64,000 nucleotides of DNA, taken from positions 124,001 to 188,000 of IMG/VR virus record IMGVR_UViG_3300010938_000951. One strand, written 5' to 3'. Numbering within the stretch: the first letter of the stretch is position 1; each line of letters opens with the position of its first letter. The position numbers and the translations under genes were made by a program. The notes below the pieces were generated by a model. The model did no database searches, was not told the origin of the DNA, and saw nothing but the letters and a program-made list of their open reading frames with translations. Positions 4,301 to 55,348 of the stretch are shown in pieces.

Positions 4301-4307
4301 AATTTAT

Positions 4308-33249: not shown

Positions 33250-33513
33250 ATGGGTTTACGTAGATTTCATTTCGAAAGAACTGAAGATGCGTCCGGTGTA
33301 AGTGGTTGTGGACGAGTAGCGGAAGGTTGTCTGTTTACGGACACAGGCGAAGCAGTAGTTCACTGGTTAGGAAATCATGGTAGTATTAATGTCTACCATT
33401 CCATTGAAGATATCATTTATGTCCATGGACATGAAGGTAGAACCAGGATTGTATTTGATGATCCTCAGCCAGCAAGTGAAGCTAAGGAAGAGTTAAAGAA
33501 GGATGGAAATTAA
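33250..33513 (+). CDS. Conserved phage hypothetical protein
   Basis: RTEDASGVSGCGRVAEG motif. Confidence 0.7.
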   Translation: MGLRRFHFERTEDASGVSGCGRVAEGCLFTDTGEAVVHWLGNHGSINVYHSIEDIIYVHGHEGRTRIVFDDPQPASEAKEELKKDGN

Positions 33514-34222: not shown

Positions 34223-34569
34223 ATTACTCCCAAAACCAACTCAAGAATCTAGCCCAAAGCAACCCAAAAGAATTAGCAAGAATTTTAACCAGCCCCAACG
34301 CCGACATTCATACGTTGACATTTGGGGCTGAACTTTTAGGGGATGTAAACGATGAGCGGATTGTTCTCCCTACACTTCGACAGCTACTTAAGCATATTAA
34401 CGCTATTGTTAGAGAAGGCGCTTTGATGGGAGTTTCTTCTTTTTATTCAGAAAAGAAGCCGCCTCAGGACATTTTGGATAGACTTCGCTCTATTGCTAGT
34501 AATGATCCTTCTCCTTCTTTAAGGGGTGATGCGAAGGCAATTCTGGAAGATTTGGAGGCTCTGCCATGA
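34219..34569 (+). CDS. HEAT-repeat-like protein
   Basis: HINAIVREGA, DPSPSLRGDA. Confidence 0.6.
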   Translation: MNYSQNQLKNLAQSNPKELARILTSPNADIHTLTFGAELLGDVNDERIVLPTLRQLLKHINAIVREGALMGVSSFYSEKKPPQDILDRLRSIASNDPSPSLRGDAKAILEDLEALP

Positions 34570-35081
34570 AAGAGAAAAAAGCTGATTTATTCGAAATGAT
34601 TTATGAAGATGGTGTTGATGCTATCTGCATTACTACCAATGGTATGTGGTTGACTGATGGGCGCGCAGCCATGGGTGGAGGATGTGCAGGAGTATGTGCT
34701 AAGCGCTGGCCCGAGACTGCTGTGCGATTGGGCAAGTGTTTAAAAAATTTCCTAGTCAATGTTCCATTTGTTATTGGAGCGCTAAACGAAAAGGGCGAGT
34801 ATATTGAGCCCACGTTAAAAATGATTAAAGAAAAGAAGTTTAAAACACTCATTCTTAGCTATCCTACTATTGATGATTTATTAAGCGGCGCCAAGATTAG
34901 TCTCATTGAAAATTCAGCCAAAGAAATAAAAGCCTTAGCAGATAAATACGGCCTCAAAGGAATTGTAGTACCACGCCCTGGTGTTGGGATTGGCGGCCTT
35001 TCTTGGGGTGATGTAAAGGCGGTAATTGAGCCTTACATGGACGATAGGTTTACAGTTGTATCCTTTGAACACGAAGAATAA
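34566..35081 (+). CDS. Macro domain (ADP-ribose/Appr-1''-p processing) protein
   Basis: ITTNG, AMGGGCA, PRPGVGIGGL. Confidence 0.85.
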   Translation: MKEKKADLFEMIYEDGVDAICITTNGMWLTDGRAAMGGGCAGVCAKRWPETAVRLGKCLKNFLVNVPFVIGALNEKGEYIEPTLKMIKEKKFKTLILSYPTIDDLLSGAKISLIENSAKEIKALADKYGLKGIVVPRPGVGIGGLSWGDVKAVIEPYMDDRFTVVSFEHEE

Positions 35082-35350: not shown

Positions 35351-35512
35351 ATGAAGTTACTTAAATGTAAAATTTGTATGGGCGAAGCTGATTTTATTAA
35401 CAATGACCGATCTGTCAATCGCAAAATGAAATGTCGCAAGTGCGGATTCACTAATGAGGTTGAAAACAAGGGTCCAGAAATTGTTGTAATTAGAAAGCGC
35501 CCGATTCAATAA
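35351..35512 (+). CDS. Small Zn-ribbon protein (53 aa, not in the ORF track)
   Basis: MKLLKCKICMG...KCRKCGF; leaderless TATATT promoter 7 nt upstream. Confidence 0.65.
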   Translation: MKLLKCKICMGEADFINNDRSVNRKMKCRKCGFTNEVENKGPEIVVIRKRPIQ

Positions 35513-36443
35513 TTAATCGTTTATTTTGACGATACCAATCAATAGTTCGTATTAAGCCTGTTCGTAATTCAGTTTCTGCGGTCCAATCGAGCATTGTTTT
35601 TGAGCGGGTAACATCTAACATTCTTTTTGGTTGGCCATTTGAAACGCTACCGTTGAAAACTATTTCACCAGTGAATCCGGTCAAATCCTTAATCAGGTAA
35701 GCTAAATCCCTGATAGAAATATCTGTGCCAGTTCCTAGGTTTATGGGCAACTCTGTATCTAATCCCATTACCACTGCTTTGAGTATGGCGCGGGCCGCAT
35801 CTCCAGCATAAAGGAATTCTCTAGTGGCTTCACCAGTGCCCCAACATTCTACAGTTGTTGATTTATTTTCAATAGCTGTATCGAATTTACGAATTAAGGC
35901 AGGAATAACATGACTATTTATCAAGTCAAAATGGTCATGCTCACCATACAGGTTAACTGGTATTAAATGCGCACCACCCATGTTATATTGTTGCCTATAA
36001 GACTGTCCCAATACTAATAAAGTACGTTTTGCGATACCATATGGTGCATTGGTTTCTTCTGGATATCCATTCCATAAATCATCTTCTTTGAATGGAACAG
36101 GACAGAATTTAGGATAAGCACATACACTGCCCAACGTGTATATTTTTTTGCAACCAGCCTGATGTGCAGCCTCAAATATATTGCTGGCCATTTCTATATT
36201 CTTATGTAAAAAATCGGCCGGACTATTCTTGTTGGCTAAAATTCCGCCACATATTGCGGCCATATGCAAAATAACATCTGGATTTTGCGCTTTAATTATA
36301 CGAATAGTATGTTCTCGATCTAATAGATTTAATCCCCTACTAGAAGGGTATATTAGATCAAATTGCCCAAAACTAAATTCTGTAAACTGTTTTACAACAT
36401 GTTTACCTAAAAATCCAGTACCGCCAGTAATCAAAATTTTCAT
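35490..36443 (-). CDS. fcl: GDP-L-fucose synthase
   Basis: GGTGFLG, AAICGGILAN, GSVCAYPK, YGIAK, PVNLYG, SHVIPALIRK, REFLY. Confidence 0.93.
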   Translation of the reverse strand: MKILITGGTGFLGKHVVKQFTEFSFGQFDLIYPSSRGLNLLDREHTIRIIKAQNPDVILHMAAICGGILANKNSPADFLHKNIEMASNIFEAAHQAGCKKIYTLGSVCAYPKFCPVPFKEDDLWNGYPEETNAPYGIAKRTLLVLGQSYRQQYNMGGAHLIPVNLYGEHDHFDLINSHVIPALIRKFDTAIENKSTTVECWGTGEATREFLYAGDAARAILKAVVMGLDTELPINLGTGTDISIRDLAYLIKDLTGFTGEIVFNGSVSNGQPKRMLDVTRSKTMLDWTAETELRTGLIRTIDWYRQNKRLIIESGAF

Positions 36444-37444
36444 TTGTGATGGTCCTTAAGTGTTTTTTCTCTTCTAGCTAATTCTAAATCGGAGTCAACC
36501 ATCTCTTGGACTAAATCCAAAAAGCTATATGATGGTTCCCATCCTAATTGTGTTCTAAGTTTAGTAGAATCTCCGCAGAGAGCATCAACCTCTGATGGTC
36601 TTAAATATTTTGAATCAAATTCAACATATTGAGACCAATCTAATCCCAGGATACCAAATACCAACTTACCAAACTCTTCAACCGAGTGCATTTCTCCAGA
36701 AGATACCACAAAATCATCTGGCTGTGGTGCTGTAATAATTTTATACATTGCATCAGCTACATCAGCAGCATGTGACCAATCTCGTTCAGCTTTTAAATTT
36801 CCTAGATAAAGCTTATCTTGTAAGCCCAGTTTAATGCGTGTTGCAGCTCTAGTAATCTTTCTGGTTACGAATGTTTCACCACGCCTTGGGCTTTCATGGT
36901 TGAAAGAAATAGCGTTGCAAGCATGTAAACCATAAGCTTCACGATAATTTACCGTAGCATAGTAGCCGGCTACTTTTGCAACACCATATGGGCTACGAGG
37001 GTGAAATGGTGTATTTTCATTCTGTGGTGGTGGTTGTGAGCCAAACATTTCTGAGCTGGAAGCAGTAAGAAATTTTGTTTTTGGACTATTCTTGCGTATT
37101 GCCTCTAGCACTCGCATTACGCCAGTACCTGTTACATCCATAGTATATTCAGGAATATCAAAGCTAACACGAACATGACTCTGGGCGGCCATATTAAAAA
37201 ATAGATCTGGTTTAATATCACCAATCCAACTTGCCAGAGATGAATAGTCAGATAAATCGCCGTAGACCATCTCTAGCTTACCACTATCAATGTGTGGATC
37301 TACATAAACGTGATCAATGCGTTCGGTGTTGAGTGAGCTACTACGGCGCTTAAGTCCATATACTTTATAACCTTTAGATAGCAATAGGTCACATAGATAA
37401 GATCCTGTTTGACCGGTAATGCCAGTGATACATGCAGTTTTCAT
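36440..37444 (-). CDS. gmd: GDP-mannose 4,6-dehydratase
   Basis: GITGQTGSY, AQSHVRVSF, SSEMFG, PRSPYGVAK, NHESPRRGETFVTRK. Confidence 0.96.
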   Translation of the reverse strand: MKTACITGITGQTGSYLCDLLLSKGYKVYGLKRRSSSLNTERIDHVYVDPHIDSGKLEMVYGDLSDYSSLASWIGDIKPDLFFNMAAQSHVRVSFDIPEYTMDVTGTGVMRVLEAIRKNSPKTKFLTASSSEMFGSQPPPQNENTPFHPRSPYGVAKVAGYYATVNYREAYGLHACNAISFNHESPRRGETFVTRKITRAATRIKLGLQDKLYLGNLKAERDWSHAADVADAMYKIITAPQPDDFVVSSGEMHSVEEFGKLVFGILGLDWSQYVEFDSKYLRPSEVDALCGDSTKLRTQLGWEPSYSFLDLVQEMVDSDLELARREKTLKDHHK

Positions 37445-38637
37445 AACTTCCTATATAACGATAACGTTCTTGGTAAAGGATAACTATCTACCCTTTTTAC
37501 TAACTCACAGCCGTGGTCGATAAAAAGGCGCTCATATGTTGGCATATCATCAATATCTTCTATTAAGATGTATTCGTTAGAAATACTTAACAAAGTCTTA
37601 ACAAAATCAGAAGGGCTAATTACATCTTTAATATGATGTACAATAGCTAATGCCAACACCAAATCTGATTTGTATCTGTCGGTCTCAAACCACTTATTAT
37701 CACGAATGGATTCTATAGTTTTTACAGCAAATATTGCTGGTAATTTAAACTGCCGATTAAATCCATAAGCCATATCTATACATGCTGAAACTAAATCAAA
37801 ACCTATAACAGATTTTGCTTTTTTAGCTGACAAAAAACTATAGTATCCTTTATTGCACGCTACATCTGTTACAGTTTCATAATCCAATTCTTGTAGTATA
37901 TTAGCTATATTAATGCCTTTAACTTGTAGTGATTCTGGATGATCAATGTCCATTGTATTAGAATAATTTTCTGACCAATGAGATTTATCTAAAGTAACTG
38001 GTATGTCACTTATAGCTTGGGCCAATTCTAACCAGGCTTCGGGTGTTGTATAGTCTTTCTCAATAAATGAGGTTAATATATCATTTGTATTTTTAATATC
38101 ATCAAGGCATAATTCATAGGCATTACATTGTGTAGATTTTAAAACCCACCTACGTACTAAATAACTAGTTAAAACAAAAGCAATAATAGAATTTTCTGGA
38201 GTATTCTCAAATATACCACCATAATCTAGCCATTTGAAACCATCAATTGTTTGAACTGCGTTAGATTCTTGTATATCTCTAGCTATTAAACCATGCTTAA
38301 CTAATTCAGAATTAAGTTTACAAATATTAGCAATGAATTCTTTGGCGTATGTTATTGGTAATTCTTGGATCCTGATATGATGTTTGTATATTGTGTGTTC
38401 ATACACCGGCATAATATCATCAGAGCCATCTATACCTGTAAAATCCAACATAAATTCTGTTGGTGTAGCCGTTTGTATGGCAGGTATATTTGATGATAAT
38501 ATTTTATTAAAAATGGTAAACATACTTAAGTTGTATGACCTTAATAATCTGCCCTGATACCAAAATAATGGACAACATAACTCAGAAGAAGCAATATGTC
38601 TAGATATATCGTTTAATGTCAAAACTTGTTTAGACAT
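37441..38637 (-). CDS. SAM-dependent methyltransferase domain protein
   Basis: C-terminal DVACNKGYYS, LALAIVHH. Confidence 0.7.
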   Translation of the reverse strand: MSKQVLTLNDISRHIASSELCCPLFWYQGRLLRSYNLSMFTIFNKILSSNIPAIQTATPTEFMLDFTGIDGSDDIMPVYEHTIYKHHIRIQELPITYAKEFIANICKLNSELVKHGLIARDIQESNAVQTIDGFKWLDYGGIFENTPENSIIAFVLTSYLVRRWVLKSTQCNAYELCLDDIKNTNDILTSFIEKDYTTPEAWLELAQAISDIPVTLDKSHWSENYSNTMDIDHPESLQVKGINIANILQELDYETVTDVACNKGYYSFLSAKKAKSVIGFDLVSACIDMAYGFNRQFKLPAIFAVKTIESIRDNKWFETDRYKSDLVLALAIVHHIKDVISPSDFVKTLLSISNEYILIEDIDDMPTYERLFIDHGCELVKRVDSYPLPRTLSLYRKL

Positions 38638-39757
38638 TAATGCTCCTTATATATTCATTTGTTGTATCAATAATATATTGTTGTTCTGCTGCAGTTAATT
38701 CTGGATAGCTTGGTAAAATAAAACATTCTTTATTAAGCAAATCAGCAGTGATACAGCTAACTAATTCAACATCAGGATTATTTCTAAGATGATCATGATT
38801 ATATATTGAATAAAACATTGGTCTAATCTCTATGCCTCGGCTGTTAAAGAAATTTTGGGCATCGTTATATGATTGTTGTCCAATTACACGAATTCCAAAC
38901 ATCCAATTGGCATTAGCCGTATTTTCTTCATGAAGTTGTATTCTAACTTCATTACGATCTTTGAATGCATTTCGATAGTTTTCAAACAAGTCTCTTTTCA
39001 AAGATAATATTTCTTGTAAATGTTCTAGTTGGCCATATAGGATAGCTGCTTGAATATTAGTCATTCGATAATTATAGCCAAGTTCTTTATGAATAAATCT
39101 TGTGCTAGATTGACCTTGTCCTTGTACACATTTAGCATATTCATAAGCATCATCTGTTTGTGTTATAAAGGCACCGCCCTCACCACTTGTAATATTTTTA
39201 TTCCCAAAGAATGAGACAGCAGAAGAAAATCCGGCACGACCAGTTGCTAATCCTCCATAACCACCTAAAAATCCTTCACAATTATCTTCTACAAAATAAG
39301 TTGAAGGAAATTTTTCCTGAAGCTTTGGTACATTGATAACATTTCCAATGTTATGTACAATTAAAACATCTGCATCTGGATTATTAGTAATAGCTGTTTC
39401 TAGGCTGCTTATATCAACATTCCATGTATCCAAATTAGCATCTACTGGAATTAAATGATAGTTGTTATCAAATAAAAAGGCGTTCCAAGCAGCAACATAA
39501 ACATTATTTGGTACTATTATTTTCTTTTTCTGTCCCAATAGTGGTGGCCTAGCTCTATATAAGGTTTTAGCTACTAAATGACAAGCGCTAGTACCATTAT
39601 TGAGAGGCAAGACATATGGTGTATGTAATAAATCCTGTAACCTCTCTGTTACTAATGATAAATATCTTCCTTGGGAAGATATCCAGGTAGAATCTAATGC
39701 ATCATGCGCATATTGAAGTGAATTTGGCGGCAGATATGGTTTATATACTGGAATCAT
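38630..39757 (-). CDS. DegT/DnrJ/EryC1/StrS aminotransferase (GDP-perosamine synthase-like)
   Basis: WISSQG, NGTSACHL, EDNCE, SFFGNKNITSGEGG, GYNYRMTNIQAA. Confidence 0.92.
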   Translation of the reverse strand: MIPVYKPYLPPNSLQYAHDALDSTWISSQGRYLSLVTERLQDLLHTPYVLPLNNGTSACHLVAKTLYRARPPLLGQKKKIIVPNNVYVAAWNAFLFDNNYHLIPVDANLDTWNVDISSLETAITNNPDADVLIVHNIGNVINVPKLQEKFPSTYFVEDNCEGFLGGYGGLATGRAGFSSAVSFFGNKNITSGEGGAFITQTDDAYEYAKCVQGQGQSSTRFIHKELGYNYRMTNIQAAILYGQLEHLQEILSLKRDLFENYRNAFKDRNEVRIQLHEENTANANWMFGIRVIGQQSYNDAQNFFNSRGIEIRPMFYSIYNHDHLRNNPDVELVSCITADLLNKECFILPSYPELTAAEQQYIIDTTNEYIRSINV

Positions 39758-40575
39758 AGATAATGTCCTAGTGCTGTTATAAAAAGTTCCCAGTTTTTAG
39801 TAATTGTAGCGTTGGAATATATTTTACCATCAAATACTAAATTGGCTACGAGATCGTCATCATATCTATAACCAACAACATTGGCTACTGCTGTTGCTAG
39901 ACAAAATCCACCGCCTATACCAAAATTTATTACAACTGCTGCTTGGTTCATAATCGAACAATCATGTTGTATATTTTTAATATCAGGAGTGGTGATTCCT
40001 AAGGCTGGGACAGTTAAATCTAAAAGACGCTCCTTGGGAACATTATTAAGTATATGCGGATATAAGCTGTAGATATACTCTTGGGTATAATACATATACT
40101 CTTCATTCATTTCTATAACTCTCTCACCTAATATTACTATTAAGTATTTTTGTGAAAGCTGATTAAGTACCGTCCAAAATTCTCTTATTGAATTATCTAG
40201 AAGATTATGCGGAAGAGAACGTATTTTCGTATTAATGACGATGTATGGCTCTTTGAGGTTTAAAGAATATCCGTCACATAACAAGTGGGCTAATTCAGGC
40301 TTTTGTGGCATTATACGATGAGCAGTAACAAACTCCGATAAACTACAAAATGGAAATGATTGATCACATAATTTGTAAGGCTCTTCATTAAATAATAGCT
40401 TTCCAAATTCATCAAGAAAATCATTATATTTTGATTCTTTTTTGTATTTATCTATTAGCTCTCTATGAAAAGTAAGATTGATCTCAGAAAAATTATGTTT
40501 GACTGGCTCAAGCATTGCTTTTATATAGATTAAATCCCCTAAACCAATGGGTATGTTGGCATTTAGTTTTTTCAT
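39754..40575 (-). CDS. Hypothetical protein (possible glycosyltransferase fold)
   Basis: IGLGDL N-terminus; operon context. Confidence 0.55.
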   Translation of the reverse strand: MKKLNANIPIGLGDLIYIKAMLEPVKHNFSEINLTFHRELIDKYKKESKYNDFLDEFGKLLFNEEPYKLCDQSFPFCSLSEFVTAHRIMPQKPELAHLLCDGYSLNLKEPYIVINTKIRSLPHNLLDNSIREFWTVLNQLSQKYLIVILGERVIEMNEEYMYYTQEYIYSLYPHILNNVPKERLLDLTVPALGITTPDIKNIQHDCSIMNQAAVVINFGIGGGFCLATAVANVVGYRYDDDLVANLVFDGKIYSNATITKNWELFITALGHYL

Positions 40576-40630
40576 TATATTATAGAGAGATGCGCTATTA
40601 GTGCAAGCATTGCCTTATAAATATGATACC

Positions 40631-40936
40631 TTAATACGTTTTATGTTGGTCTTGTATAAATGACCCGTCGTTAAGGTCTTTACCATTAAGAGCTGCGCTA
40701 ATCATTTCCGCAATTTTTTTATCAACTTCCAATATCATTGCCTGTCTTTGCACATTCAAATCGGTAGCTTTTTTGAAAGTATTGTATAGTTTTTGCATAC
40801 CTTCTTCTGTTCCAAAATTAGCTTTGAATTCTTCAAAAGTCATCCTTCTAATAACATACAACTCATCCTGTACTAAGAACATTTTTTGATTTACCGTTGC
40901 CAATTTGTCTATTAATGATCCAATTGTATCAGCCAT
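40631..40936 (-). CDS. DUF4254-like hypothetical protein
   Basis: TIGSLIDKL, DLNVQR. Confidence 0.55.
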   Translation of the reverse strand: MADTIGSLIDKLATVNQKMFLVQDELYVIRRMTFEEFKANFGTEEGMQKLYNTFKKATDLNVQRQAMILEVDKKIAEMISAALNGKDLNDGSFIQDQHKTY

Positions 40937-41555
40937 TCTTTTTCTCCAGTTTTCTAGCAGGAACCCCTACATATATCCCACTTTCTACTATATCTTTTGA
41001 CACACAAGCGCTGGCCCCAATAGTTACATCGCTACAAATAGAGATATCTTCTACTGTTGAAGAGTTAGTTCCCATATATACTTTATCTCCGGCTATAACT
41101 TTTCCACTAACATGAACACCAGGAGCAGTAGTAAAAAAATCACCAGTTTGAACATCATGACCAATAGTTGTGGCCAAATTAAGTTGAGCAAAATTGCCCA
41201 TTTTAATATCACATGTTAAAATGCAGTTAGCGCAAATTACCGAACCATATCCCACTACAATAGTGGGATCCATTAAATTGGCCTTTGGATGAACTAAAGT
41301 TGCAAACACTTCTAGTCCATGAGTTTCAATAATGTTTTTAACAATTTTTTCTCGTAATTTGGGGCTACCAACAGCTACAACAGCTAAGTGTTGAGATGGA
41401 TCAAAATAATTTTCATCTTTAACTGGTGTGCCATGATAGTCTTCACCAGCATGGATATCAATGAAAGCGTCAACTACATATCCACATTGTTGAGCTAACC
41501 AAAATACTTCTTTAGCAAAGCCGCCAGCCCCAAAGATACAAATAGTTTTAGACAT
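40929..41555 (-). CDS. Sugar N/O-acetyltransferase (NeuD/PglD/PerB family)
   Basis: GAGGFAKE, AVGSP, hexapeptide repeats, IGHD, YVGVPA. Confidence 0.92.
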   Translation of the reverse strand: MSKTICIFGAGGFAKEVFWLAQQCGYVVDAFIDIHAGEDYHGTPVKDENYFDPSQHLAVVAVGSPKLREKIVKNIIETHGLEVFATLVHPKANLMDPTIVVGYGSVICANCILTCDIKMGNFAQLNLATTIGHDVQTGDFFTTAPGVHVSGKVIAGDKVYMGTNSSTVEDISICSDVTIGASACVSKDIVESGIYVGVPARKLEKKNG

Positions 41556-42468
41556 TGAGATTCCTTTCTATTAATTCCTCTATGACAATAGGATTATTGC
41601 TGCCCGATACAGTTACTCTTGATGAGTAATTAATTTTATCTCTGAATAATTCTGATAACCAAAATGTATTATCTTTGATCGGTACCATGTTTGAAAAACA
41701 TACTAAATTTTTAGGTTTGTTAAACAAATTATCCTGAATAAATGAAAATGTAAATGCTCCAGAAGCTCTACCAATAATAGTATCACAATATGTACTTATA
41801 AAAGCATTTTCATTTAAATCAAAACCATTCTTATTGATAAGTGAAGACGAATATATTATATTAGGATATTTGGTTGGATCAAATCCGGGCTCATGATTAG
41901 TAAAAATAAAAGTAAAGCCGTGGTACTTGTTTGCTAATTTTGATATTACTGGTAACATAGGAAAGTTGTCTGCTTGACCAGACTGCGCATAGCCATTGGC
42001 AACTAATACTAGGGGGCCAGTATTATTGTCTAATATCTTTTTAGCATGTTCAATTTCATATTTTGAAAAATCTATTTTAGGAAACCATTTTGAAGGATCG
42101 GGCTCAATATCTGATAAAGTAAAACCAAAATGTGTTTTGCATAATTCATCAAATATAACGTATAGACAATCAAAAGTAATACCATATGTATTCATATAAT
42201 GAAAACGTTTTTGTGCATACCATGTGTTAATGTACATAGTATCACCTCTGATAAATGTACCTTCATGTTCGTGCCAATTAAGAGGGTATTGATTATATCC
42301 TATTCCAGGTATGTCTGCAATACAGTTTGCATTGTTTCTATGTGAGTATGAAATATTCACTCCTGGAAATTTTTTACTAAATGCCATAGATAGTTTTCTG
42401 ACAAACTCTCTAGATACATGTATGTCGCCATTATGAAAATGGTTGTAGAAAACTATATTTTTATACAT
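41548..42468 (-). CDS. Hypothetical protein (possible glycosyltransferase fold)
   Basis: HNGDIHVSR, IIGRASG; operon context. Confidence 0.55.
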   Translation of the reverse strand: MYKNIVFYNHFHNGDIHVSREFVRKLSMAFSKKFPGVNISYSHRNNANCIADIPGIGYNQYPLNWHEHEGTFIRGDTMYINTWYAQKRFHYMNTYGITFDCLYVIFDELCKTHFGFTLSDIEPDPSKWFPKIDFSKYEIEHAKKILDNNTGPLVLVANGYAQSGQADNFPMLPVISKLANKYHGFTFIFTNHEPGFDPTKYPNIIYSSSLINKNGFDLNENAFISTYCDTIIGRASGAFTFSFIQDNLFNKPKNLVCFSNMVPIKDNTFWLSELFRDKINYSSRVTVSGSNNPIVIEELIERNLNV

Positions 42469-43031
42469 TATAGACTCGAAGTTGGAATAGTTAAATATGG
42501 TTCTGGAACAACATCTGCAAATGTATAGTTGCGTACCCCAGAATTATGAACGTGATATGTTTTGATTGATTTACTTGGGTTGCTAACTGCATAGCCGGCT
42601 TTATGAAATTCATAAGCAATTCTATTATCACAGCCCCTTGTTCCTAAGGTAAAATTACCAAATACATTTTCTACTTTACCTTTAAAAATCCATGTGTCTT
42701 GGCTATCTGGCCTATCAAAAAAACGAACCATAGCATCATTTCCTAACCAATCCCAACGACTTAAAGCATATAATTGTTTGTGTTTTATATTTTCGGCTAA
42801 TGCAATGGTATCATCCAAAAAAATATCCGAATTACAGATAATACTAATGTCTTCTTCATCAACAACTTTATTAATTTGATCAAAAAAGAATTGATACGTT
42901 GGTTTACTAGCAGACTCACAAATGATAGTAGTTATAAACTTGTTATTTAAGTTTCTTTGTAAGCACATATCAATTTCACGTTTGCGAAGAGGGTGTTTAT
43001 CTTCATAGTAATTATAAAATAATCTGATCAT
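42468..43031 (-). CDS. Putative glycosyltransferase-like protein
   Basis: CNSDIF, ALSRW, SQDTWIF, GCDNRIA. Confidence 0.55.
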   Translation of the reverse strand: MIRLFYNYYEDKHPLRKREIDMCLQRNLNNKFITTIICESASKPTYQFFFDQINKVVDEEDISIICNSDIFLDDTIALAENIKHKQLYALSRWDWLGNDAMVRFFDRPDSQDTWIFKGKVENVFGNFTLGTRGCDNRIAYEFHKAGYAVSNPSKSIKTYHVHNSGVRNYTFADVVPEPYLTIPTSSL

Positions 43032-43032
43032 A

Positions 43033-43989
43033 TTACACCAAATGAATTAAATTAGTCATATGCAATAACTCTATGACTCTTGAAGTAAATGTATGTTCTT
43101 TAAGAACTCGTTGATAGCCATTCATACCAACTTGTTTAGCGATATCTGGATTTGCTTTACAATAATTAACAATATCAACTATTTCTTTAGTTGAGCGCGC
43201 AATGAATATTTCTTTACCTTCAATAAAATAACTTTCAAATCCTGGGAAGTGCCATGAAATAGTTGGTCGGCCAGACGCCATACAGGCCAATAATCTGTCT
43301 GAAAAATAATGTGACACACTATTAAAATTACTAATGCTTAACGTACAGACGCTTTGGTTATAGATTTCGTTTGCCATGTACGGAGCTACTGTCGGTGCGG
43401 GCGGCACATATCCAGATCCAAAAAGACCAAAACTTGTACCAAACATACTTCTAAGGGTGTCTACTACTCCAACTCTTAAACTACCATCAGGAAATGTATG
43501 GCCATAATTGTTTGCTAAGAAACTAACATCATATTTGTGAGTTTCTAAATTCATGGGAAAATGTGCTTTAGGATTATACCCAATTTGCCAATACTTAACG
43601 TTATGACAGCCTGCCGCTTTATACATTTCTAATTGACCAGTACTAGAGATAAGAGAGTAATCTACTACATTAGTAATATTTGTAAATTGTGCTTGTGCTT
43701 GTGCTCTAACGTCGCCTGTCCAATTAGTGATTATCACTCCTGGTGAAAGATTGCGGGCCTCTTGTATAATGCTAGCATCTATAATACCAGTGAATTGAAG
43801 CTGCATATGAATTAAATGTGGTTGTAGATTTCTTACTTTTGATAAGAACTCATTATTTACCACTCCCTTGCTGTGTGTTCTGTCCCATAATCCAACAAAA
43901 TCAAATACATCAAGTTTCACGCCAACATTTTCAAAAGCGTCTACCATTCCTGGTTGGCTGCCAATTGGCAAGTAAAGTACTCTTAACAT
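43033..43989 (-). CDS. Glycosyltransferase (GT1-like, CgeB type)
   Basis: YDVSFLANNY, YFSDRLLACMASG. Confidence 0.8.
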   Translation of the reverse strand: MLRVLYLPIGSQPGMVDAFENVGVKLDVFDFVGLWDRTHSKGVVNNEFLSKVRNLQPHLIHMQLQFTGIIDASIIQEARNLSPGVIITNWTGDVRAQAQAQFTNITNVVDYSLISSTGQLEMYKAAGCHNVKYWQIGYNPKAHFPMNLETHKYDVSFLANNYGHTFPDGSLRVGVVDTLRSMFGTSFGLFGSGYVPPAPTVAPYMANEIYNQSVCTLSISNFNSVSHYFSDRLLACMASGRPTISWHFPGFESYFIEGKEIFIARSTKEIVDIVNYCKANPDIAKQVGMNGYQRVLKEHTFTSRVIELLHMTNLIHLV

Positions 43990-45779
43990 TAAACACCTAC
44001 CAATTTTTGTATTGAATCTACTAATCCATTATTATATGATTCGCTAAATTTAGCCGGAGTTTTTGGTATCTCATTTATAAATGTACTTATGGCTTTATGA
44101 ATACTTTCTGATGTAGGATGTGTAGAATTATTTTGAGCAATCATTACTGATCCAATTAAATTAAGGAAGGCTTGATTATTAGTAATAATAGGAAGTGAAA
44201 GCGCACCAGCTAGTTTTAAAATACCAGACATATAATAGGTATTAGTAGAAATATCAATAACAGCTTTAGCGCCCATTAATAGGTTGGAGATACTTTCAAA
44301 AGAAACAGTATCAGATACAAACTCTGCAAATGTTGGTAGCTTGACACGCGAACCAACGATGATTAGTTTACCAAAACGTTCTTCCCAAGATTCTAACAAA
44401 AGGCGCGTGATGTTTTCATCTTTTTCAAAATATAAGAAGTAGTCATATTTGAATGCTTGTACATTAAGCATTGGCCAAGGTTTATCTACTCGAAGGACGT
44501 GAGCTTCGGGAATGGATCTAAGGATCTCTTGAGCATTAATTAAAGAGGGTGTCAAAATAGTTTTACAACTTCTTAGTTTATCAATATGCGATTGTGTTAG
44601 ATTGCCGTTATACCATTCATCAACCCAGACCCTATCTCCGCTTGCTAGGGTGTCTAGTGAACACATGATAATATTTGGCGCTTCCGCAGATTTTTTAAAC
44701 TCAAACATTGCAATAGCTTTAGATGATACAGCAATGTTTGGAAAGAATGGGGCAATTTTACGCAACCATAATCTAGAACTTGGTGAATTGGGAAGAATAA
44801 CCCCCGCATTATCAAAAGTAACGGGCGGTTTAAACGTTTCAGGCGTTAGTAAAGCGAACTCTTTGCTATTACTTAAAACCTTAAAATTTAATGAATCTGG
44901 TGTTGGTTCTTTGTAATTATTTGATAGCAAAGAGCCCGGAACACCAGGGTGTTGTAATCCCTCTGCAACCATACGGGCATGCATTGGTGGTCGAGCTACA
45001 GAGTTAAGTACAGTTGGAACACCAGTATTTTGAATATTAGAGACGAAAGTAGATGGTATATTAGGCGATCCAAAATGGAAAGTTGGGGCAGATGGGGGCT
45101 GTATAACAACGGCTGGTTGAGACCCTACATATGGTAGCATCAATCCGGCTTCATTTTTAACAGCAAACCATATTCTTCTTTTATGAATATTGGTGCTATT
45201 ATCATTTTGGGGAGCCCAATCATATCTATACTCTCCAGAGTTAAACTTAGGGTTATCCATACGTTTAAAACTCATACCGCAATCTGTTAAGACTCGCTCT
45301 ACATATGCGGTACTTGGGCGACAACCGGTGCCATTATAAGATAAGTCATAAACATCTTTGCCTTCTTGGACGGTAACCACTTTATATGGATCATCAGAAT
45401 CCAAAACGGCAGTTTCTAAAACTAGATATGTAGTTGAAGAACAAACAGCTTTTAAATGTTCATCTATTGATGCCAGATGACAAATCAAACCCAAATCTAA
45501 AACCATATCGAATTTGGTTCCAAAAAATGGCCAATTACCTTCTAAATTGGCTCGAACTACTTTAACACCCGGAAATTTTTTAGATACAATTTTGAGGTGA
45601 TCTTGTCTGGCATCTACTGCAGTTATGTCGGCTCCTAGACGATAAAGCGTTCCACTTAAATCTGCATATCCGCAGCCTAAATCAGCAATCTTTTTGCCAT
45701 AAAAAAACTTATAACCATATTGGTCAACAATGCCTTTAATGCGTTTTTGATTCCAATCGAAATATTTTCCGTCAAACAT
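43989..45779 (-). CDS. Class I SAM methyltransferase fused to a probable glycosyltransferase-like domain
   Basis: IADLGCGYA, AVDAR, LGLICH, VLET; Pro-rich linker. Confidence 0.7.
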   Translation of the reverse strand: MFDGKYFDWNQKRIKGIVDQYGYKFFYGKKIADLGCGYADLSGTLYRLGADITAVDARQDHLKIVSKKFPGVKVVRANLEGNWPFFGTKFDMVLDLGLICHLASIDEHLKAVCSSTTYLVLETAVLDSDDPYKVVTVQEGKDVYDLSYNGTGCRPSTAYVERVLTDCGMSFKRMDNPKFNSGEYRYDWAPQNDNSTNIHKRRIWFAVKNEAGLMLPYVGSQPAVVIQPPSAPTFHFGSPNIPSTFVSNIQNTGVPTVLNSVARPPMHARMVAEGLQHPGVPGSLLSNNYKEPTPDSLNFKVLSNSKEFALLTPETFKPPVTFDNAGVILPNSPSSRLWLRKIAPFFPNIAVSSKAIAMFEFKKSAEAPNIIMCSLDTLASGDRVWVDEWYNGNLTQSHIDKLRSCKTILTPSLINAQEILRSIPEAHVLRVDKPWPMLNVQAFKYDYFLYFEKDENITRLLLESWEERFGKLIIVGSRVKLPTFAEFVSDTVSFESISNLLMGAKAVIDISTNTYYMSGILKLAGALSLPIITNNQAFLNLIGSVMIAQNNSTHPTSESIHKAISTFINEIPKTPAKFSESYNNGLVDSIQKLVGV

Positions 45780-45810
45780 TCTTTCTACCTTAACTCTTAT
45801 TGGATTTTAT

Positions 45811-46557
45811 TCACAGTGATGGGTCATTGAATGGAATAAAACATGGTTTAACCCTACTCATATAGGCATAACAATTTTTCTGAAATTTTGTTAAATTATC
45901 TCGGTGTTGTTTGGTCTTAAATTCTCTATATTCTCCAACGTCTAATTCTCCCTCTCCAAAGTGGGATCCTCTTCCTGGTAAATAGCCAATCTCCCATCCT
46001 GCCATTCTTGCTCTAAAATACCAATCAGCATCTTCTTCCCCATACAAACCATAGTCTAAAGTAAAGAATCCAATCTTTTTGTGTAAATCACGATGGAAAA
46101 CAGAACAAGCAGTACCAAGGTTTCCATCTGGTTTTTTCTGGAACGTCTTTCCGTTCCTAGTAACTAAAGGATAATCAGTTCCTTCAAAATTAATACCGAT
46201 GGCCAGTCTGTGATTGTCTTGTATTAAATCAATACATTGACGAAGCCAATCGTAATGAACTTCGATATCATTGTCTATAGTACATAGATATTCTGCTTCT
46301 GGAACAAGTTTATCTGCTAATTGAAGTCCTTGATTTCTTCCTACTGCGATTCCTTTATTTTCCGCATTAAAATGCAAATGGATTTTGGCAGAGTTTTCTT
46401 TAACCATTTCAGATAGCCATTCTTGTGTTCCATCAGTAGATCCATTATCTACAATTATTAATTGATAATGTCCAATTGTATTAGCGAAAAAGCTTTTTAA
46501 CATTCTTTTAGTTAAATCGAGACGGTTGTAGGTTACCATCATAATAGCAGTTGTCAT
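45811..46557 (-). CDS. Glycosyltransferase family 2
   Basis: VTYNR, VDNGSTDGT, GIAVGRN, IDND, YGEEDAD. Confidence 0.92.
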   Translation of the reverse strand: MTTAIMMVTYNRLDLTKRMLKSFFANTIGHYQLIIVDNGSTDGTQEWLSEMVKENSAKIHLHFNAENKGIAVGRNQGLQLADKLVPEAEYLCTIDNDIEVHYDWLRQCIDLIQDNHRLAIGINFEGTDYPLVTRNGKTFQKKPDGNLGTACSVFHRDLHKKIGFFTLDYGLYGEEDADWYFRARMAGWEIGYLPGRGSHFGEGELDVGEYREFKTKQHRDNLTKFQKNCYAYMSRVKPCFIPFNDPSL

Positions 46558-46624: not shown

Positions 46625-47086
46625 ATGTCATATAGCGAAAAAGTAATTGATCATGCAGAAAACCCACGAAATGTAGGAACATTGGATAAAAATGATCCAG
46701 ATGTTGGAACTGGTTTGGTTGGAGCGCCAGCTTGTGGTGATGTAATGCGCCTTCAAATAAAAGTGGATCCGGCTACTGAAATCATTATTGATGCAAAGTT
46801 TAAAACTTTTGGATGCGGCTCTGCTATTGCGGCATCTTCACTAGCAACCGAATGGATCAAAGGCAAAAGTATTGATGAGGCAGAAGCACTTAAAAATTCA
46901 GCTATAGTAGAGGAGTTAAGTTTGCCTCCTGTCAAAATTCACTGTAGCGTACTTGCTGAAGACGCCATTAAAAGCGCTATTGCTGATTACCGAGCTAAGA
47001 AAACTATAAAAGAAGAAACTCATGGCACTAATAATTTACGGCAAGACAACATGCCAAATATGCAACAAAACCCTGGACAAGAATGA
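46625..47086 (+). CDS. iscU: Fe-S cluster scaffold IscU
   Basis: NPRNVG, GAPACGDVM, FKTFGCGSAIA, LPPVKIHCSVLAEDA. Confidence 0.97.
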   Translation: MSYSEKVIDHAENPRNVGTLDKNDPDVGTGLVGAPACGDVMRLQIKVDPATEIIIDAKFKTFGCGSAIAASSLATEWIKGKSIDEAEALKNSAIVEELSLPPVKIHCSVLAEDAIKSAIADYRAKKTIKEETHGTNNLRQDNMPNMQQNPGQE

Positions 47087-55272: not shown

Positions 55273-55348
55273 GTCCCCGTGGTCCAAGGGATGGGCACCG
55301 CACTCCTAAGGCGGCATTATGCTGGTTCGAGTCCAGCCGGGGATACCA
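55273..55348 (+). tRNA. tRNA-Arg(CCU)
   Basis: GTCCCCG/CGGGGAT, CCGCA-ctCCTaa-GGCGG, CCA. Confidence 0.88.

What the first reader, a model, noticed from the sequence alone, without database searches (positions are those of the whole stretch)
35490..46557. 11-kb minus-strand glycosylation operon: GDP-fucose, GDP-(N-acetyl)perosamine, GTs and methyltransferases
Twelve tightly coupled genes. Gmd, Fcl, a Per-like aminotransferase and a PerB-like acetyltransferase match the pathway used for the E. coli O157 O-antigen sugars. There are also GT2, a GT1-like enzyme, two SAM methyltransferases and four unknown ORFs. No Wzx/Wzy/ABC exporter or obvious membrane protein is present, which argues for a cytoplasmic acceptor (virion proteins or phage DNA) rather than host surface conversion.
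Basis: partly seen in the sequence, partly recalled or inferred. Interest (0 to 1): 0.6.

Follow-up and report, generated by a model that had tools for sequence, protein, structure and literature searches.

The report
Hypervariable glycan-synthesis island in a huge phage
A huge bacteriophage carries a 12-gene cassette that makes activated fucose and N-acetyl-perosamine and builds them into a methylated sugar chain using only soluble enzymes; the cassette's middle changes between related phages like a bacterial serotype locus, and what it decorates (probably the virus particle, possibly the host envelope) is still unproven.

Summary
Twelve tightly coupled minus-strand genes lie at 35490-46557, the only sizeable minus-strand block in a plus-strand huge-phage genome (a 267-kb record, 62% complete; the same proteins sit on a 490.8-kb contig).

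The enzymology is well supported:
- Gmd scores above its curated cut-off.
- Fcl keeps its catalytic motifs.
- The aminotransferase is Per-like and keeps the PLP lysine.
- The N-acetyltransferase is VioB/PglB/PerB-like and keeps the catalytic His.
- Gmd is the only 4,6-dehydratase in the record.

Of the four "unknown" ORFs, two (273 and 306 aa) are new compact GT-B transferases with a GT9-like fold. One (101 aa) is a divergent DUF4254. The 187-aa ORF stays unresolved.

The cassette sits at a fixed site in related 200-480-kb phages, with conserved edges and a middle that is swapped between genomes. A DegT-DUF4254-GT9-like core recurs in more than 80 uncultured viral contigs.

No priming transferase, flippase, ABC-2 permease or Wzy/ligase was found in the island or in the 267-kb record. 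None scored above threshold in eight related records, four of them at least 95% complete. Only 4 of 2,080 neighbouring ORFs look multi-pass.

This fits cytoplasmic glycosylation of virion proteins (about 0.45). It does not exclude LPS-core-type remodelling through host MsbA (about 0.3). DNA is an unlikely acceptor.

The parts
35490..36443 (-). fcl: GDP-L-fucose synthase (GDP-4-keto-6-deoxymannose 3,5-epimerase/4-reductase), 317 aa
   Evidence: NF047922 GDPFucSynFcl E 6e-81, 272 bits, below the curated 500. The best solved homologs are all GDP-fucose synthases (1e6u, E 2e-63). The aligned motifs GSxCxYP, PYxxAK and NSHVIPA are conserved.
36440..37444 (-). gmd: GDP-mannose 4,6-dehydratase, 334 aa
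   Evidence: TIGR01472 443.9 bits, above the cut-off of 415. PF16363 E 1e-121. It is the only 4,6-dehydratase in the 267-kb record. It is 92-94% identical in L002 and L003.
37441..38637 (-). X-MT398: two-domain protein with an N-terminal kinase-like domain (about 1-240) and a C-terminal class I SAM methyltransferase (about 245-375)
   Evidence: Weak methyltransferase Pfam hits at residues 254-373. Structural neighbours of the N-terminal domain in the Atlas are bacterial kinase-like plus methyltransferase fusions, including a cluster auto-named 'NoeA' and an APH/Pkinase cluster (TM 0.60-0.75). The best PDB sequence hit is the WbdD methyltransferase domain, not significant at E 0.07. It is a singleton among 84 related loci.
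38630..39757 (-). per-like PLP aminotransferase (predicted GDP-perosamine synthase), 375 aa
   Evidence: PF01041 E 3e-62. The best solved homolog is Caulobacter perosamine synthetase (3bn1, E 7e-38). The closest NCBIfam model is the GDP-sugar LegC family. The PLP lysine motif SFFGNK is conserved, so it is not a ColD-type dehydratase.
39754..40575 (-). unk273: compact GT-B glycosyltransferase with a GT9-like fold, 273 aa
   Evidence: No Pfam, NCBIfam or PHROG hit. AlphaFold2 model pLDDT 94, pTM 0.91. VIA-align: GT9 3tov Z 11.8, TibC Z 11.6, WaaF Z 11.4, WaaC Z 10.4, then a drop. Foldseek: TibC, WsaF and GT9. 98 homologs, none with a functional name.
40631..40936 (-). unk101: divergent DUF4254-family small protein, 101 aa; the conserved partner of unk306 and the aminotransferase
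   Evidence: 24 of 40 family members match PF14063 DUF4254; the window's own copy does not. Present in 60 of 84 loci. Adjacent to unk306 in 35 of 62 cases, mostly with a 4-nt overlap; the commonest order is DegT-unk101-unk306.
40929..41555 (-). NeuD/PglB/VioB/PerB-type left-handed beta-helix sugar N-acetyltransferase, 208 aa
   Evidence: TIGR03570 158.4 bits, cut-off 160.8. PglD_N domain. PDB: VioB E 8.5e-31, PglB-type E 6e-21, PerB E 8.5e-20. The catalytic His (GHD aligned to PerB DHD) is conserved.
41548..42468 (-). unk306: compact GT-B glycosyltransferase with a GT9-like fold, 306 aa; the family that anchors the module
   Evidence: No Pfam, NCBIfam or PHROG hit. AlphaFold2 model pLDDT 90, pTM 0.90. 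VIA-align: GT9 3tov Z 15.2, WaaF Z 14.9, WaaC Z 13.5, TibC Z 12.7, other GT-B about 9.6-11. Foldseek: WaaF E 1e-7. 176 homologs, none with a functional name, many on 200-510 kb contigs. 102 viral contigs in IMG/VR.
42468..43031 (-). unk187: conserved protein of unknown function, 187 aa (weak lead: small GT-A-like transferase)
   Evidence: Nearest Atlas clusters are viral hypotheticals (0.98). The nearest named clusters are DUF707, Glyco_transf_7C and GT2 at 0.91-0.92, which is a lead only. Invariant acidic positions N67, D69 and C134, D135. No Pfam, PDB-profile or hhalign support. Always sits between the GT1-like gene and unk306 in the huge-phage clade.
43033..43989 (-). GT1-like318: GT-B glycosyltransferase carrying the Glyco_trans_1_2 (PF13524) C-terminal domain, 318 aa
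   Evidence: PF13524 E 1e-21. In P0281 and P0282 it is fused to the first ~310 residues of the neighbouring MT-X596 (61-71% identity).
43989..45779 (-). MT-X596: three-part protein with an N-terminal class I SAM methyltransferase (1-~150), a middle domain (~150-300) and a C-terminal domain (~297-596), the last two of unknown function
   Evidence: Methyltransf_25 and Methyltransf_11 at residues 31-111. The domain boundaries come from natural fusions and fragments P0252, P0263, P0264, P0281 and P0282. The middle and C-terminal domains have no detectable relatives by hhalign or PDB profile search.
45811..46557 (-). GT2 family (GT-A) glycosyltransferase, 248 aa; first gene of the operon
   Evidence: PF00535 E 1e-23. 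phrog_2456 glycosyltransferase E 3e-13. It is the only GT2 in the record.

Best explanation
This is a self-contained, exporter-less glycan-building cassette of a huge lytic-type phage.

Steps supported by sequence evidence:
- Gmd converts host GDP-mannose to GDP-4-keto-6-deoxymannose.
- Fcl turns part of that into GDP-L-fucose.
- The Per-like PLP aminotransferase and the PerB/VioB-type acetyltransferase turn the rest into GDP-N-acetylperosamine, or a close 4-acetamido-4,6-dideoxyhexose.

Inferred steps:
- At least four soluble glycosyltransferases (GT2, GT1-like, and the two new GT9-like GT-B enzymes unk306 and unk273, possibly also unk187) assemble these sugars, and probably host UDP-sugars, into an oligosaccharide in the cytoplasm.
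- The two methyltransferase-containing multidomain proteins O-methylate it, or cap it.
- The DUF4254-like unk101 acts with unk306.

The cassette sits at a fixed genomic site. Its conserved edge enzymes probably build the acceptor-proximal part. Its middle is exchanged between related phages, so the distal glycan differs from phage to phage like a serotype.

The most likely acceptor (inferred, not shown) is one or more phage structural proteins, glycosylated in the cytoplasm before or during assembly. That would give virions a variable sugar coat, as in chloroviruses, mimiviruses and mycobacteriophages.
For: Sugar-nucleotide steps:
- Gmd is above its equivalog cut-off.
- Fcl best matches solved GDP-fucose synthases and keeps the catalytic motifs.
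- The aminotransferase best matches perosamine synthase and keeps the PLP lysine.
- The acetyltransferase matches VioB, PglB and PerB and keeps the catalytic His.
- Gmd is the only 4,6-dehydratase in the record.
- DegT co-occurs with Gmd-type SDRs in 45 of 56 loci.

Transferases:
- Pfam identifies GT2 and PF13524.
- High-confidence models of unk306 and unk273 give GT9-like GT-B folds that stand above other GT-B matches.
- The protein heptosyltransferase TibC is among the top hits for both.
- Natural fusions of the MT-X596 N-terminal half with the GT1-like enzyme link methylation to transfer.

Soluble, exporter-less character:
- No transmembrane segments in the 12 proteins.
- No Bac_transf, WecA-type, Wzx, ABC-2 or Wzy/ligase in the 267-kb record.
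- None above threshold in eight related records, four of them at least 95% complete and one 452 kb with terminal repeats.
- Only 4 of 2,080 ORFs in 84 loci look multi-pass.

Serotype-like variation at a fixed site:
- Flanking genes are 84-94% identical, while PerB is replaced in L002/L004 by a hexapeptide acyltransferase, an 85-aa ORF, an AMP-ligase and an SDR.
- X-MT398 plus unk273 are replaced there by a 226-aa O-methyltransferase.
- Other relatives carry C-methyltransferases, FkbM-type methyltransferases, GT10, GT11 and GT25.

It is a real phage with structural genes: terminase, portal and prohead protease.

Precedents for virus-encoded cytoplasmic virion glycosylation: the giant-virus glycan review was listed (its content is cited from my own knowledge), and mycobacteriophage capsid and tail-tube glycans are as summarised in PMC12619734.
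Against: No direct evidence identifies the acceptor.
- The island lies about 65 kb from the structural genes, among tRNA, translation and auxiliary genes. In mycobacteriophages the glycosylation genes adjoin the structural genes (from my own knowledge).
- LPS heptosyltransferases match the two GT-B models as well as or better than TibC does.
- Relatives carry families typical of LPS core/LOS synthesis (GT25, WavE, HtrL_YibB). These act on lipid A-core without any dedicated exporter.
- The nucleotide carrier and C4 stereochemistry of the amino sugar are inferred. VioB, a dTDP-sugar enzyme, is the acetyltransferase's best solved match.
- No cultured phage carries the module.
- No RNA or DNA run was listed.
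- The unk306:unk101 complex test could not be run.
Confidence: 0.45

Rival explanations
1. Host-envelope remodelling. The same soluble enzymes act at the cytoplasmic face of the inner membrane on a host lipid-linked acceptor, either lipid A-core (LOS-type) or a host Und-PP-linked intermediate. The host's MsbA or its own Wzx/ABC transporter and ligase then carry the product outward. Infected cells would acquire a fucose/N-acetylperosamine/O-methyl epitope that blocks superinfection or stops progeny from sticking to debris.
For: LPS-core glycosyltransferases are peripheral proteins and need no dedicated exporter (established knowledge), so the absence of phage exporters is compatible with this reading. 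The best structural matches of unk306 and unk273 are the LPS heptosyltransferases WaaF and WaaC and other GT9 members. Related loci carry GT25, GT10, GT11, WavE and HtrL_YibB genes, which are families known from LOS/LPS synthesis. Fuc and PerNAc are classic O-antigen sugars. A kinase-like plus methyltransferase protein recalls the O-polysaccharide chain terminator WbdD, but only weakly. Cyanophage 'LPS/cell-wall' gene sets that include Gmd are usually read this way.
Against: No membrane-anchoring or lipid-carrier function appears in any of 84 loci or eight large records. The known seroconverting phages are temperate and use membrane proteins such as Gtr or Oac (my own knowledge). This lineage looks lytic: one relative has terminal repeats, and I did not look for integrases. 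The payoff of rebuilding LPS within one lytic cycle is uncertain. The enzymes would have to match acceptor structures that vary between hosts. The function of the cyanophage genes has itself never been shown.
Confidence: 0.3
2. Glycosylation of another soluble target: a non-structural phage protein, a host cytoplasmic or secreted protein (for example flagellin, pilin or an adhesin, as TibC does), or a small molecule.
For: All enzymes are soluble. TibC-like fold matches. PF13524 and PglB-type acetyltransferases occur in protein-glycosylation systems (my own knowledge).
Against: No candidate target gene is conserved beside the module in 84 loci. Serotype-like diversification is hard to explain for an intracellular target.
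Confidence: 0.12
3. Phage DNA hypermodification: the glycan is attached to a modified base in virion DNA.
For: Phages do glycosylate DNA, sometimes with di- or trisaccharides and with unusual sugars such as heptose and Kdo, using GT-A and GT-B enzymes. The neighbours of the module in small contigs are replication and repair genes.
Against: No ThyS-family hydroxymethylase in this record or in eight relatives. No TET/JBP hit, though that control was silent. The described DNA glycosyltransferases sit beside ThyS or 5mYOX/C5-MT genes and resemble T4 beta-GT, which is not among the listed matches of unk306 or unk273. Neither DNA-glycan paper read here mentions fucose or a GDP-sugar donor for a DNA glycosyltransferase. 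At least four transferases plus several methyltransferases would build a glycan far larger than any known base modification.
Confidence: 0.03

Closest known systems
Bacterial Fuc/PerNAc O-antigen pathways (E. coli O157 rfb: gmd, fcl, per, wbdR/perB; also the Vibrio cholerae O1 and Caulobacter perosamine pathways)
   Same: The same four-enzyme logic from GDP-mannose: Gmd, Fcl, a Per-type aminotransferase and a PerB-type N-acetyltransferase. In L002/L004 the acetyltransferase slot holds a hexapeptide acyltransferase, an 85-aa ORF, an AMP-ligase and an SDR. This recalls the N-acyl (tetronate) perosamine genes of V. cholerae O1 (from my own knowledge).
   Different: There is no manB/manC, no initiating transferase and no wzx/wzy or wzm/wzt. 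The transferases are unrelated: new GT9-like families, PF13524 and multidomain methyltransferases. The cassette lies in a phage genome.
Giant-virus capsid and fibril glycosylation clusters (PBCV-1 Gmd/GMER with the GT-GT-MT protein A064R; the Mimivirus R135-L143 cluster with aminotransferase L136 and N-acetyltransferase L142)
   Same: A virus-encoded nucleotide-sugar pathway (6-deoxyhexoses, 4-amino-4,6-dideoxyhexose, N-acetylation), several soluble transferases, methyltransferase domains in multidomain proteins, no lipid carrier or exporter, and clade-specific variation in gene content. This comparison rests on my own knowledge; the review PMC9614988 was listed but I did not read it.
   Different: The hosts are eukaryotes. 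I tested no sequence relationship to those transferases because the viral fold library was unavailable. In the giant viruses the acceptors have been shown experimentally; here they have not.
Mycobacteriophage virion O-glycosylation (Freeman et al. 2023)
   Same: Phage-encoded soluble glycosyltransferases, and methyltransferases by my recollection, decorate capsid and tail-tube subunits in the cytoplasm (as summarised in PMC12619734).
   Different: Those are small siphophages whose glycosylation genes adjoin the structural genes and which encode no nucleotide-sugar synthesis (my own knowledge). Here the island is about 65 kb from the structural genes and makes its own donors.
Cyanophage 'LPS/cell-wall' auxiliary gene sets
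   Same: Gmd homologs at about 50% identity occur in Synechococcus phages S-SKS1, S-SCSM1 and S-SRM01. Large sets of glycosyltransferases and sugar-nucleotide enzymes of untested function occur in a cyanomyovirus.
   Different: unk306 is absent from every cultured phage record and is found only in the uncultured huge phages LR756504, LR756501 and LR756503. The DegT-DUF4254-GT9-like core and the fixed-site variable architecture were not mentioned in the papers my searches returned.
CAZy GT9 heptosyltransferases (WaaC, WaaF, TibC)
   Same: The overall two-Rossmann GT-B fold over nearly the full length of both models (Z 15.2-12.7 for unk306, Z 11.8-10.4 for unk273).
   Different: Both proteins are shorter (273 and 306 aa against 320-390). 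Neither gives any Pfam match, so neither matches the GT9 model PF01075. Sequence identity is 7-17%. The donor is presumably a GDP-6-deoxyhexose, not ADP-heptose.

Membership tests
GDP-L-fucose de novo pathway (Gmd + Fcl) | A GDP-mannose 4,6-dehydratase that meets the equivalog model | tested here: met
   TIGR01472 443.9 bits against a cut-off of 415.
GDP-L-fucose de novo pathway (Gmd + Fcl) | A bifunctional 3,5-epimerase/4-reductase with the Ser/Cys, Tyr/Lys and His catalytic residues | tested here: met
   The top 18 solved homologs are all GDP-fucose synthases (E 2e-63 to 1e-37). The motifs GSxCxYP, PYxxAK and NSHVIPA are conserved in the alignment to 1e6u. The NCBIfam score of 272 is below the strict cut-off of 500.
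GDP-perosamine synthase (Per/RfbE) | A DegT-family fold-I enzyme with the PLP-binding lysine (not the ColD histidine) | tested here: met
   PF01041 E 3e-62. SFFGNK aligns with the same motif of perosamine synthase 3bn1.
GDP-perosamine synthase (Per/RfbE) | Acts on GDP-4-keto-6-deoxymannose and gives the D-manno (perosamine) C4 configuration | tested here: inconclusive
   The best solved match is perosamine synthase, and the closest NCBIfam model is the GDP-linked LegC family. Gmd is the only 4,6-dehydratase in the record. DegT co-occurs with Gmd-type SDRs in 45 of 56 loci. Substrate and stereochemistry need an assay.
PerB / NeuD-PglB-VioB sugar N-acetyltransferases | A PglD_N Rossmann-like domain, a left-handed beta-helix and the catalytic His | tested here: met
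   PF17836 E 1e-10. TIGR03570 158.4 bits against a cut-off of 160.8. The His is conserved in alignments to VioB, PglB-type enzymes and PerB.
PerB / NeuD-PglB-VioB sugar N-acetyltransferases | Specificity for GDP-perosamine and acetyl-CoA | not testable with these tools
   VioB (a dTDP-viosamine enzyme) scores better than PerB (E 8.5e-31 against 8.5e-20). Specificity cannot be read from this.
O-antigen / capsule gene cluster (Wzx/Wzy- or ABC-dependent) | An initiating phosphoglycosyl transferase, a flippase or ABC-2 permease, and a polymerase or ligase | tested here: not met
   No transmembrane proteins in the island. No PF02397, PF00953, PF01943, PF01061 or PF04932 in the record. None above threshold in eight relatives. 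Only 4 of 2,080 neighbouring ORFs are multi-pass.
CAZy GT9 (for unk306 and unk273) | Sequence membership (Pfam Glyco_transf_9) | tested here: not met
   No Pfam family even at E up to 10. The two families are also unrelated to each other by hhalign.
CAZy GT9 (for unk306 and unk273) | A GT-B fold closest to the heptosyltransferases | tested here: met
   Z 15.2, 14.9, 13.5 and 12.7 for unk306. Z 11.8, 11.6, 11.4 and 10.4 for unk273. Both sets stand above the other GT-B matches.
Phage DNA glycosylation systems | A ThyS-type hydroxymethylase or a 5mYOX/TET with C5-MT in the genome, and a DNA glycosyltransferase resembling T4 beta-GT | tested here: not met
   No PF00303 in the record or in eight relatives. 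No PF12851 hit, but the control was silent, so that test is weak. No T4 beta-GT among the listed fold matches.
Virus-encoded virion glycosylation (giant viruses, mycobacteriophages) | The glycan is demonstrated on virion proteins | not testable with these tools
   The lineage is uncultured and no sequencing run was listed.
DUF4254 (for unk101) | A match to PF14063 | tested here: inconclusive
   The window's own copy has no hit. However, 24 of 40 aligned family members match PF14063, with a best E of 1e-10.

The most novel reading that the evidence does not exclude
Huge phages, and many smaller uncultured phages that carry the DegT-DUF4254-GT9-like core, coat their virions with a self-made, heavily methylated fucose/acylamino-deoxyhexose glycan. 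The structure of that glycan is diversified by cassette exchange at a fixed locus. This would be a phage counterpart of bacterial O-antigen serotypes and of giant-virus fibril glycans. It would be built by two previously unrecognised glycosyltransferase families and a DUF4254 accessory protein.
Probability: 0.35. Interest if true: 0.75.

Novelty: new variant of a known kind. Interest (0 to 1): 0.55.

Why it matters
Virus-encoded glycan synthesis has been shown for giant viruses of eukaryotes and for a few small actinophages. For the huge phages, my literature searches returned no description of such a cluster.

- If the glycan coats the virions, phage particles would have serotype-like surface diversity. 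That would affect host recognition, adsorption to mucus or capsules, resistance to proteases or grazers, and immune recognition.
- If it remodels host LPS instead, this would be a lytic-phage seroconversion mechanism that needs no membrane proteins.
- Either way, the island assigns a fold and a pathway context to three families that have no functional name (unk306, unk273 and DUF4254) and are spread over more than 100 viral contigs.
- It also gives a defined, testable set of enzymes for making GDP-PerNAc-type donors and methylated glycans.

Tried and rejected
- Megablast of the island against 50,697 phage records found no match.
- The look-up of sequencing runs listed no run, so read laying was not used and there is no expression evidence.
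- MT-X596 middle and C-terminal domains: phmmer against PDB, a profile against PDB and hhalign against all the island's transferase families all gave nothing.
- unk187: Pfam on 13 members, a PDB profile and hhalign (best 13% probability to unk273) gave nothing. Only the Atlas lead to GT-A-like clusters remains.
- unk306 and unk273 are not detectably related to each other in sequence.
- X-MT398 as a WbdD-like kinase-methyltransferase terminator: only E 0.07 to the WbdD methyltransferase domain and an Atlas structural similarity to kinase-like domains. I keep this as a lead, not a claim.
- The promoter and terminator scans gave no more than shuffled sequence does (48 found against 56.5 expected, and 7 against 6.5), so the transcript boundaries are not defined.
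- Host inference from the phage IF-3 failed: it is 41-52% identical to homologs in many phyla.
- A dTDP-viosamine route was considered because VioB is the acetyltransferase's best match and an RmlA-like gene lies nearby. It is disfavoured because no RmlB-type dehydratase is present in the record.
- TAG recoding was considered because of the two tRNA(CTA) genes. It is rejected for this record because reading TAG as sense does not improve coding density (0.900 against 0.903).
- DNA as the acceptor is rejected as unlikely.

Full report
CONTEXT

The window is positions 124001-188000 of a single 266,899-bp viral record. IMG/VR classes the record as 'provirus' and CheckV puts it at 62% complete. The same proteins lie on a 490,849-bp JGI metagenome contig.

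The record encodes a large terminase, a portal, a prohead-protease-like protein, a DNA polymerase, an NAD-dependent DNA ligase and an EF-G-like factor. The window itself holds an rIIA-like gene, 21 tRNA genes, an IF-3, an IscU and a Thg1-like gene.

The nearest deposited relatives are uncultured 'huge phage' records of 462-735 kb. Syntenic relatives in IMG/VR are 198-481 kb, and one 452-kb genome has direct terminal repeats. This is therefore a huge phage. I saw nothing that points to lysogeny beyond the automatic 'provirus' label.

THE OBSERVATION

They are joined by overlaps of 1-8 nt or a 1-nt gap, apart from two gaps of 55 and 31 nt. Almost all other genes of the record are on the plus strand, and 12 of the 13 minus-strand ORFs in the 150-180 kb bin belong to this block. 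The G+C of the middle genes is 0.30-0.33, against about 0.38-0.40 around them. Promoter and terminator pattern scans gave no more than shuffled sequence does, so I cannot define the transcript ends.

SUGAR-NUCLEOTIDE ENZYMES

- Gmd (36440-37444) exceeds the curated equivalog cut-off: 443.9 bits against 415.
- Fcl (35490-36443) has only GDP-fucose synthases among its 18 best solved matches (1e6u, E 2e-63). It keeps the GSxCxYP, PYxxAK and NSHVIPA motifs. It is therefore an epimerase/reductase and not an Rmd-type reductase.
- The DegT-family protein (38630-39757) best matches Caulobacter perosamine synthase (E 7e-38). It keeps the PLP lysine in the SFFGNK motif, which excludes a ColD-type 3-dehydratase. 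Its closest NCBIfam model is the GDP-sugar LegC family.
- The 208-aa left-handed beta-helix protein (40929-41555) belongs to the NeuD/PglB/VioB group: 158.4 bits against a cut-off of 160.8. It matches VioB, PglB-type enzymes and PerB, and its catalytic His is conserved.
- Gmd is the only 4,6-dehydratase in the record. Across related loci the aminotransferase co-occurs with Gmd-type SDRs in 45 of 56 cases. GDP-4-keto-6-deoxymannose is therefore the likely substrate and GDP-N-acetylperosamine the likely product. The carrier nucleotide and the C4 configuration remain inferences.
- No ManB or ManC is present. The only nucleotidyltransferase is RmlA-like, about 9 kb away. GDP-mannose must come from the host, which is also an inference.

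THE FORMER UNKNOWNS

unk306 (41548-42468) and unk273 (39754-40575) have no Pfam, NCBIfam or PHROG match. Each has many homologs, 176 and 98 respectively, none with a functional name.

AlphaFold2 models built on these alignments are confident: pLDDT 90 and 94, pTM 0.90 and 0.91. Both are compact GT-B folds whose best matches are GT9 enzymes:

- unk306: Veillonella GT9 Z 15.2, WaaF Z 14.9, WaaC Z 13.5, TibC Z 12.7. Other GT-B enzymes score about 9.6-11. Foldseek gives E 1e-7 to WaaF.
- unk273: GT9 Z 11.8, TibC Z 11.6, WaaF Z 11.4, WaaC Z 10.4, then a drop.

The two families are not detectably related to each other in sequence.

unk101 (40631-40936) belongs to a family in which 24 of 40 members match DUF4254. 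I found no functional study of that family: the only two papers that hold the term each mention it once.

unk187 (42468-43031) remains open. The only lead is that its nearest named Atlas clusters are GT-A-like.

THE TWO METHYLTRANSFERASES ARE MULTIDOMAIN PROTEINS

MT-X596 has an N-terminal class I methyltransferase followed by two domains with no detectable relatives. Natural proteins P0281 and P0282 fuse its first ~310 residues directly to a close homolog of the neighbouring GT1-like enzyme. That is a Rosetta-stone link between methylation and transfer.

X-MT398 has a C-terminal methyltransferase and an N-terminal domain whose structural neighbours are kinase-like domains fused to methyltransferases. 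Its resemblance to the O-antigen terminator WbdD is not significant.

COMPARATIVE ANATOMY

Mapping the window's proteins onto related loci, and clustering 2,080 ORFs from 84 loci, gives three results.

1. Fixed site, variable middle. In the huge-phage clade the island sits between Thg1/IscU on one side and the macro-domain, HEAT and metallophosphatase genes on the other. One edge is conserved (GT2, MT-X596, GT1-like, unk187, unk306), as is the other (gmd, fcl). The middle differs from genome to genome.
   - In L002/L004 the acetyltransferase is replaced by a hexapeptide acyltransferase, an 85-aa ORF, an AMP-dependent ligase and an SDR. X-MT398 plus unk273 are replaced there by a 226-aa O-methyltransferase.
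   - Other relatives carry sugar C-methyltransferases, FkbM-type methyltransferases, a GNAT and WavE.
   - Identity is mosaic. In L002, unk187 is 91% identical to the window's copy while the adjacent unk306 is only 69%.
   - X-MT398 is unique to this phage among the 84 loci.

2. A smaller core travels widely. unk306 occurs in all 84 loci by construction. Gmd/Fcl-type SDRs occur in 64, unk101 in 60 and DegT in 56. unk101 is adjacent to unk306 in 35 of 62 cases, mostly with a 4-nt overlap, and the commonest order is DegT-unk101-unk306. In these contigs the core is joined by recognisable GT10 (34 loci) and GT11 (18 loci) fucosyltransferases, by GT25 and by C-methyltransferases. The 636-kb phage LR756504 keeps unk306-perB-unk101-per-unk273, preceded by GT25, GT10 and GT11 genes.

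3. No cultured phage has unk306.

EXPORT AND PRIMING FUNCTIONS ARE ABSENT

- None of the 12 proteins has a convincing transmembrane segment.
- The 267-kb record has no Bac_transf, WecA-type, Wzx, ABC-2 or Wzy/ligase match.
- Because the record is incomplete, I repeated the searches on eight related records. Four of them are at least 95% complete. There were no matches except sub-threshold fragments of 14-19 bits.
- Among 2,080 ORFs within about 10 kb of unk306 in 84 loci, only four look multi-pass. They form one family in four loci, 5-9 kb away.

WHAT THE ACCEPTOR IS

The evidence shows a cytoplasmic assembly line of soluble enzymes with serotype-like variation. It does not identify the acceptor.

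I favour virion proteins (0.45) for three reasons. Complete independence from membrane functions is the hallmark of the experimentally established viral systems: chlorovirus and mimivirus clusters with very similar gene content (my own knowledge), and mycobacteriophage capsid and tail-tube glycans (PMC12619734). A fixed-site variable cassette is what one expects of an exposed structure of the phage itself. TibC, a protein glycosyltransferase, is among the best fold matches.

LPS-core/LOS glycosyltransferases are exactly this kind of soluble enzyme and rely on host MsbA. LPS heptosyltransferases are the top fold matches. Relatives carry GT25, WavE and HtrL_YibB genes. I give host-envelope remodelling 0.3.

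DNA is unlikely (0.03):
- No ThyS-type hydroxymethylase is present here or in eight relatives.
- There is no TET/JBP hit, although that control was silent.
- Neither model resembles T4 beta-GT among its listed matches.
- Neither DNA-glycan paper read here mentions fucose or a GDP-sugar donor for a DNA glycosyltransferase.

Other soluble targets get 0.12.

COMPARISON WITH THE KNOWN, AND NOVELTY

The sugar-nucleotide half works like the E. coli O157, V. cholerae O1 and Caulobacter perosamine/fucose pathways. By sequence criteria it belongs to those enzyme families.

The cassette as a whole is not an O-antigen cluster, because the defining membrane functions were tested for and not found. Its architecture is closest to giant-virus glycan clusters, but in a bacteriophage and with different transferases.

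Gmd and other 'LPS' genes are known in cyanophages. Four literature searches returned no description of the Per/PerB module, the two GT9-like families, the DUF4254 partnership or the fixed-site variable island in huge phages.

I rate it a new variant of a known kind, with interest 0.55. The enzymology is ordinary. The architecture, the breadth of the uncharacterised core and the open question of the acceptor are what make it worth following.

LIMITS

- Two tests could not be run: the complex prediction for unk306:unk101 and the viral fold library.
- No sequencing run was listed.
- My ORF calls in the related loci are crude (longest ORF, greedy overlap removal), and the clustering is single-linkage BLAST. 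Counts may be off by a few loci.
- Statements about giant-virus clusters, V. cholerae O1 and the position of mycobacteriophage glycosylation genes rest on my own knowledge.

Noticed in passing
window 52544-52617 and 52628-52700: Two tandem tRNA genes with a CTA anticodon (amber suppressors; ARAGORN labels them Pyl). TAG is a rare stop in the record (17 of 352 ORFs, none between 210 and 267 kb). Reading TAG as sense does not improve coding density (0.900 against 0.903). There is therefore no evidence of recoding here, and the role of the suppressors is unexplained.
   Followed up: partly
window 839-4382, 49055-49456 and 55273-55348: Dense tRNA arrays: 21 genes in 64 kb, with duplicated Leu, His, Glu, Arg and Thr isoacceptors. 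One irregular tRNA-like gene at 49300-49377 has a two-base 'anticodon' call.
   Followed up: no
window 48197-48994 (with tRNA-His at 3275-3431): A Thg1-like tRNA-His guanylyltransferase (PF04446 E 4e-17) in a phage that also encodes two tRNA-His genes. It flanks the glycan island in all close relatives.
   Followed up: no
window 46625-47086: An IscU/NifU-type iron-sulfur scaffold protein (PF01592 E 1e-53), transcribed divergently from the island. It is conserved at this position in several relatives.
   Followed up: no
window 54725-55264; G000 69971-72055: Phage-encoded translation factors: IF-3 (TIGR00168 E 1e-62) and an EF-G-like elongation factor (phrog_6880 E 3e-116). The IF-3 is 41-52% identical to homologs from many phyla and gives no host signal.
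   Followed up: partly
window 55846-56583 and 56609-57481: A second, orphan sugar-nucleotide pair about 9 kb from the island: an RmlA-like glucose-1-phosphate thymidylyltransferase (E 1e-56) and a weak RmlD-like reductase (E 2e-16). No RmlB-type dehydratase is present in the record. Whether this pair feeds the same glycan is unknown.
   Followed up: partly
L002 10899-13393 (the same in L004): In two close relatives the N-acetyltransferase slot holds a hexapeptide acyltransferase, an 85-aa ORF, an AMP-binding ligase and an SDR. This suggests an N-acyl group other than acetyl on the amino sugar, and recalls the tetronate genes of V. cholerae O1 (my own knowledge).
   Followed up: partly
window 33503-35081: A conserved trio beside the island: a calcineurin-like metallophosphatase (239 aa), a HEAT-repeat protein (116 aa, weak) and a 171-aa protein with a weak Macro-domain hit (E 7e-4). 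The trio is syntenic in relatives.
   Followed up: no
G000 91714-92121: One further glycosyltransferase (Glycos_transf_1, 28.4 bits, within a 430-aa ORF) far from the island and outside the window.
   Followed up: no
whole record G000: IMG/VR labels this record and three relatives 'provirus'. The record was probably cut from the 490.8-kb contig. A 452-kb relative has direct terminal repeats. The label may be a trimming artefact caused by the many cell-like genes of huge phages.
   Followed up: no
L009 15428-16201: One related island contains a 257-aa protein with a Gly_rich_2 (PF21722) domain between the DUF4254 gene and gmd. It is the only structural-looking gene I saw inside an island, and it could be an acceptor candidate.
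   Followed up: no
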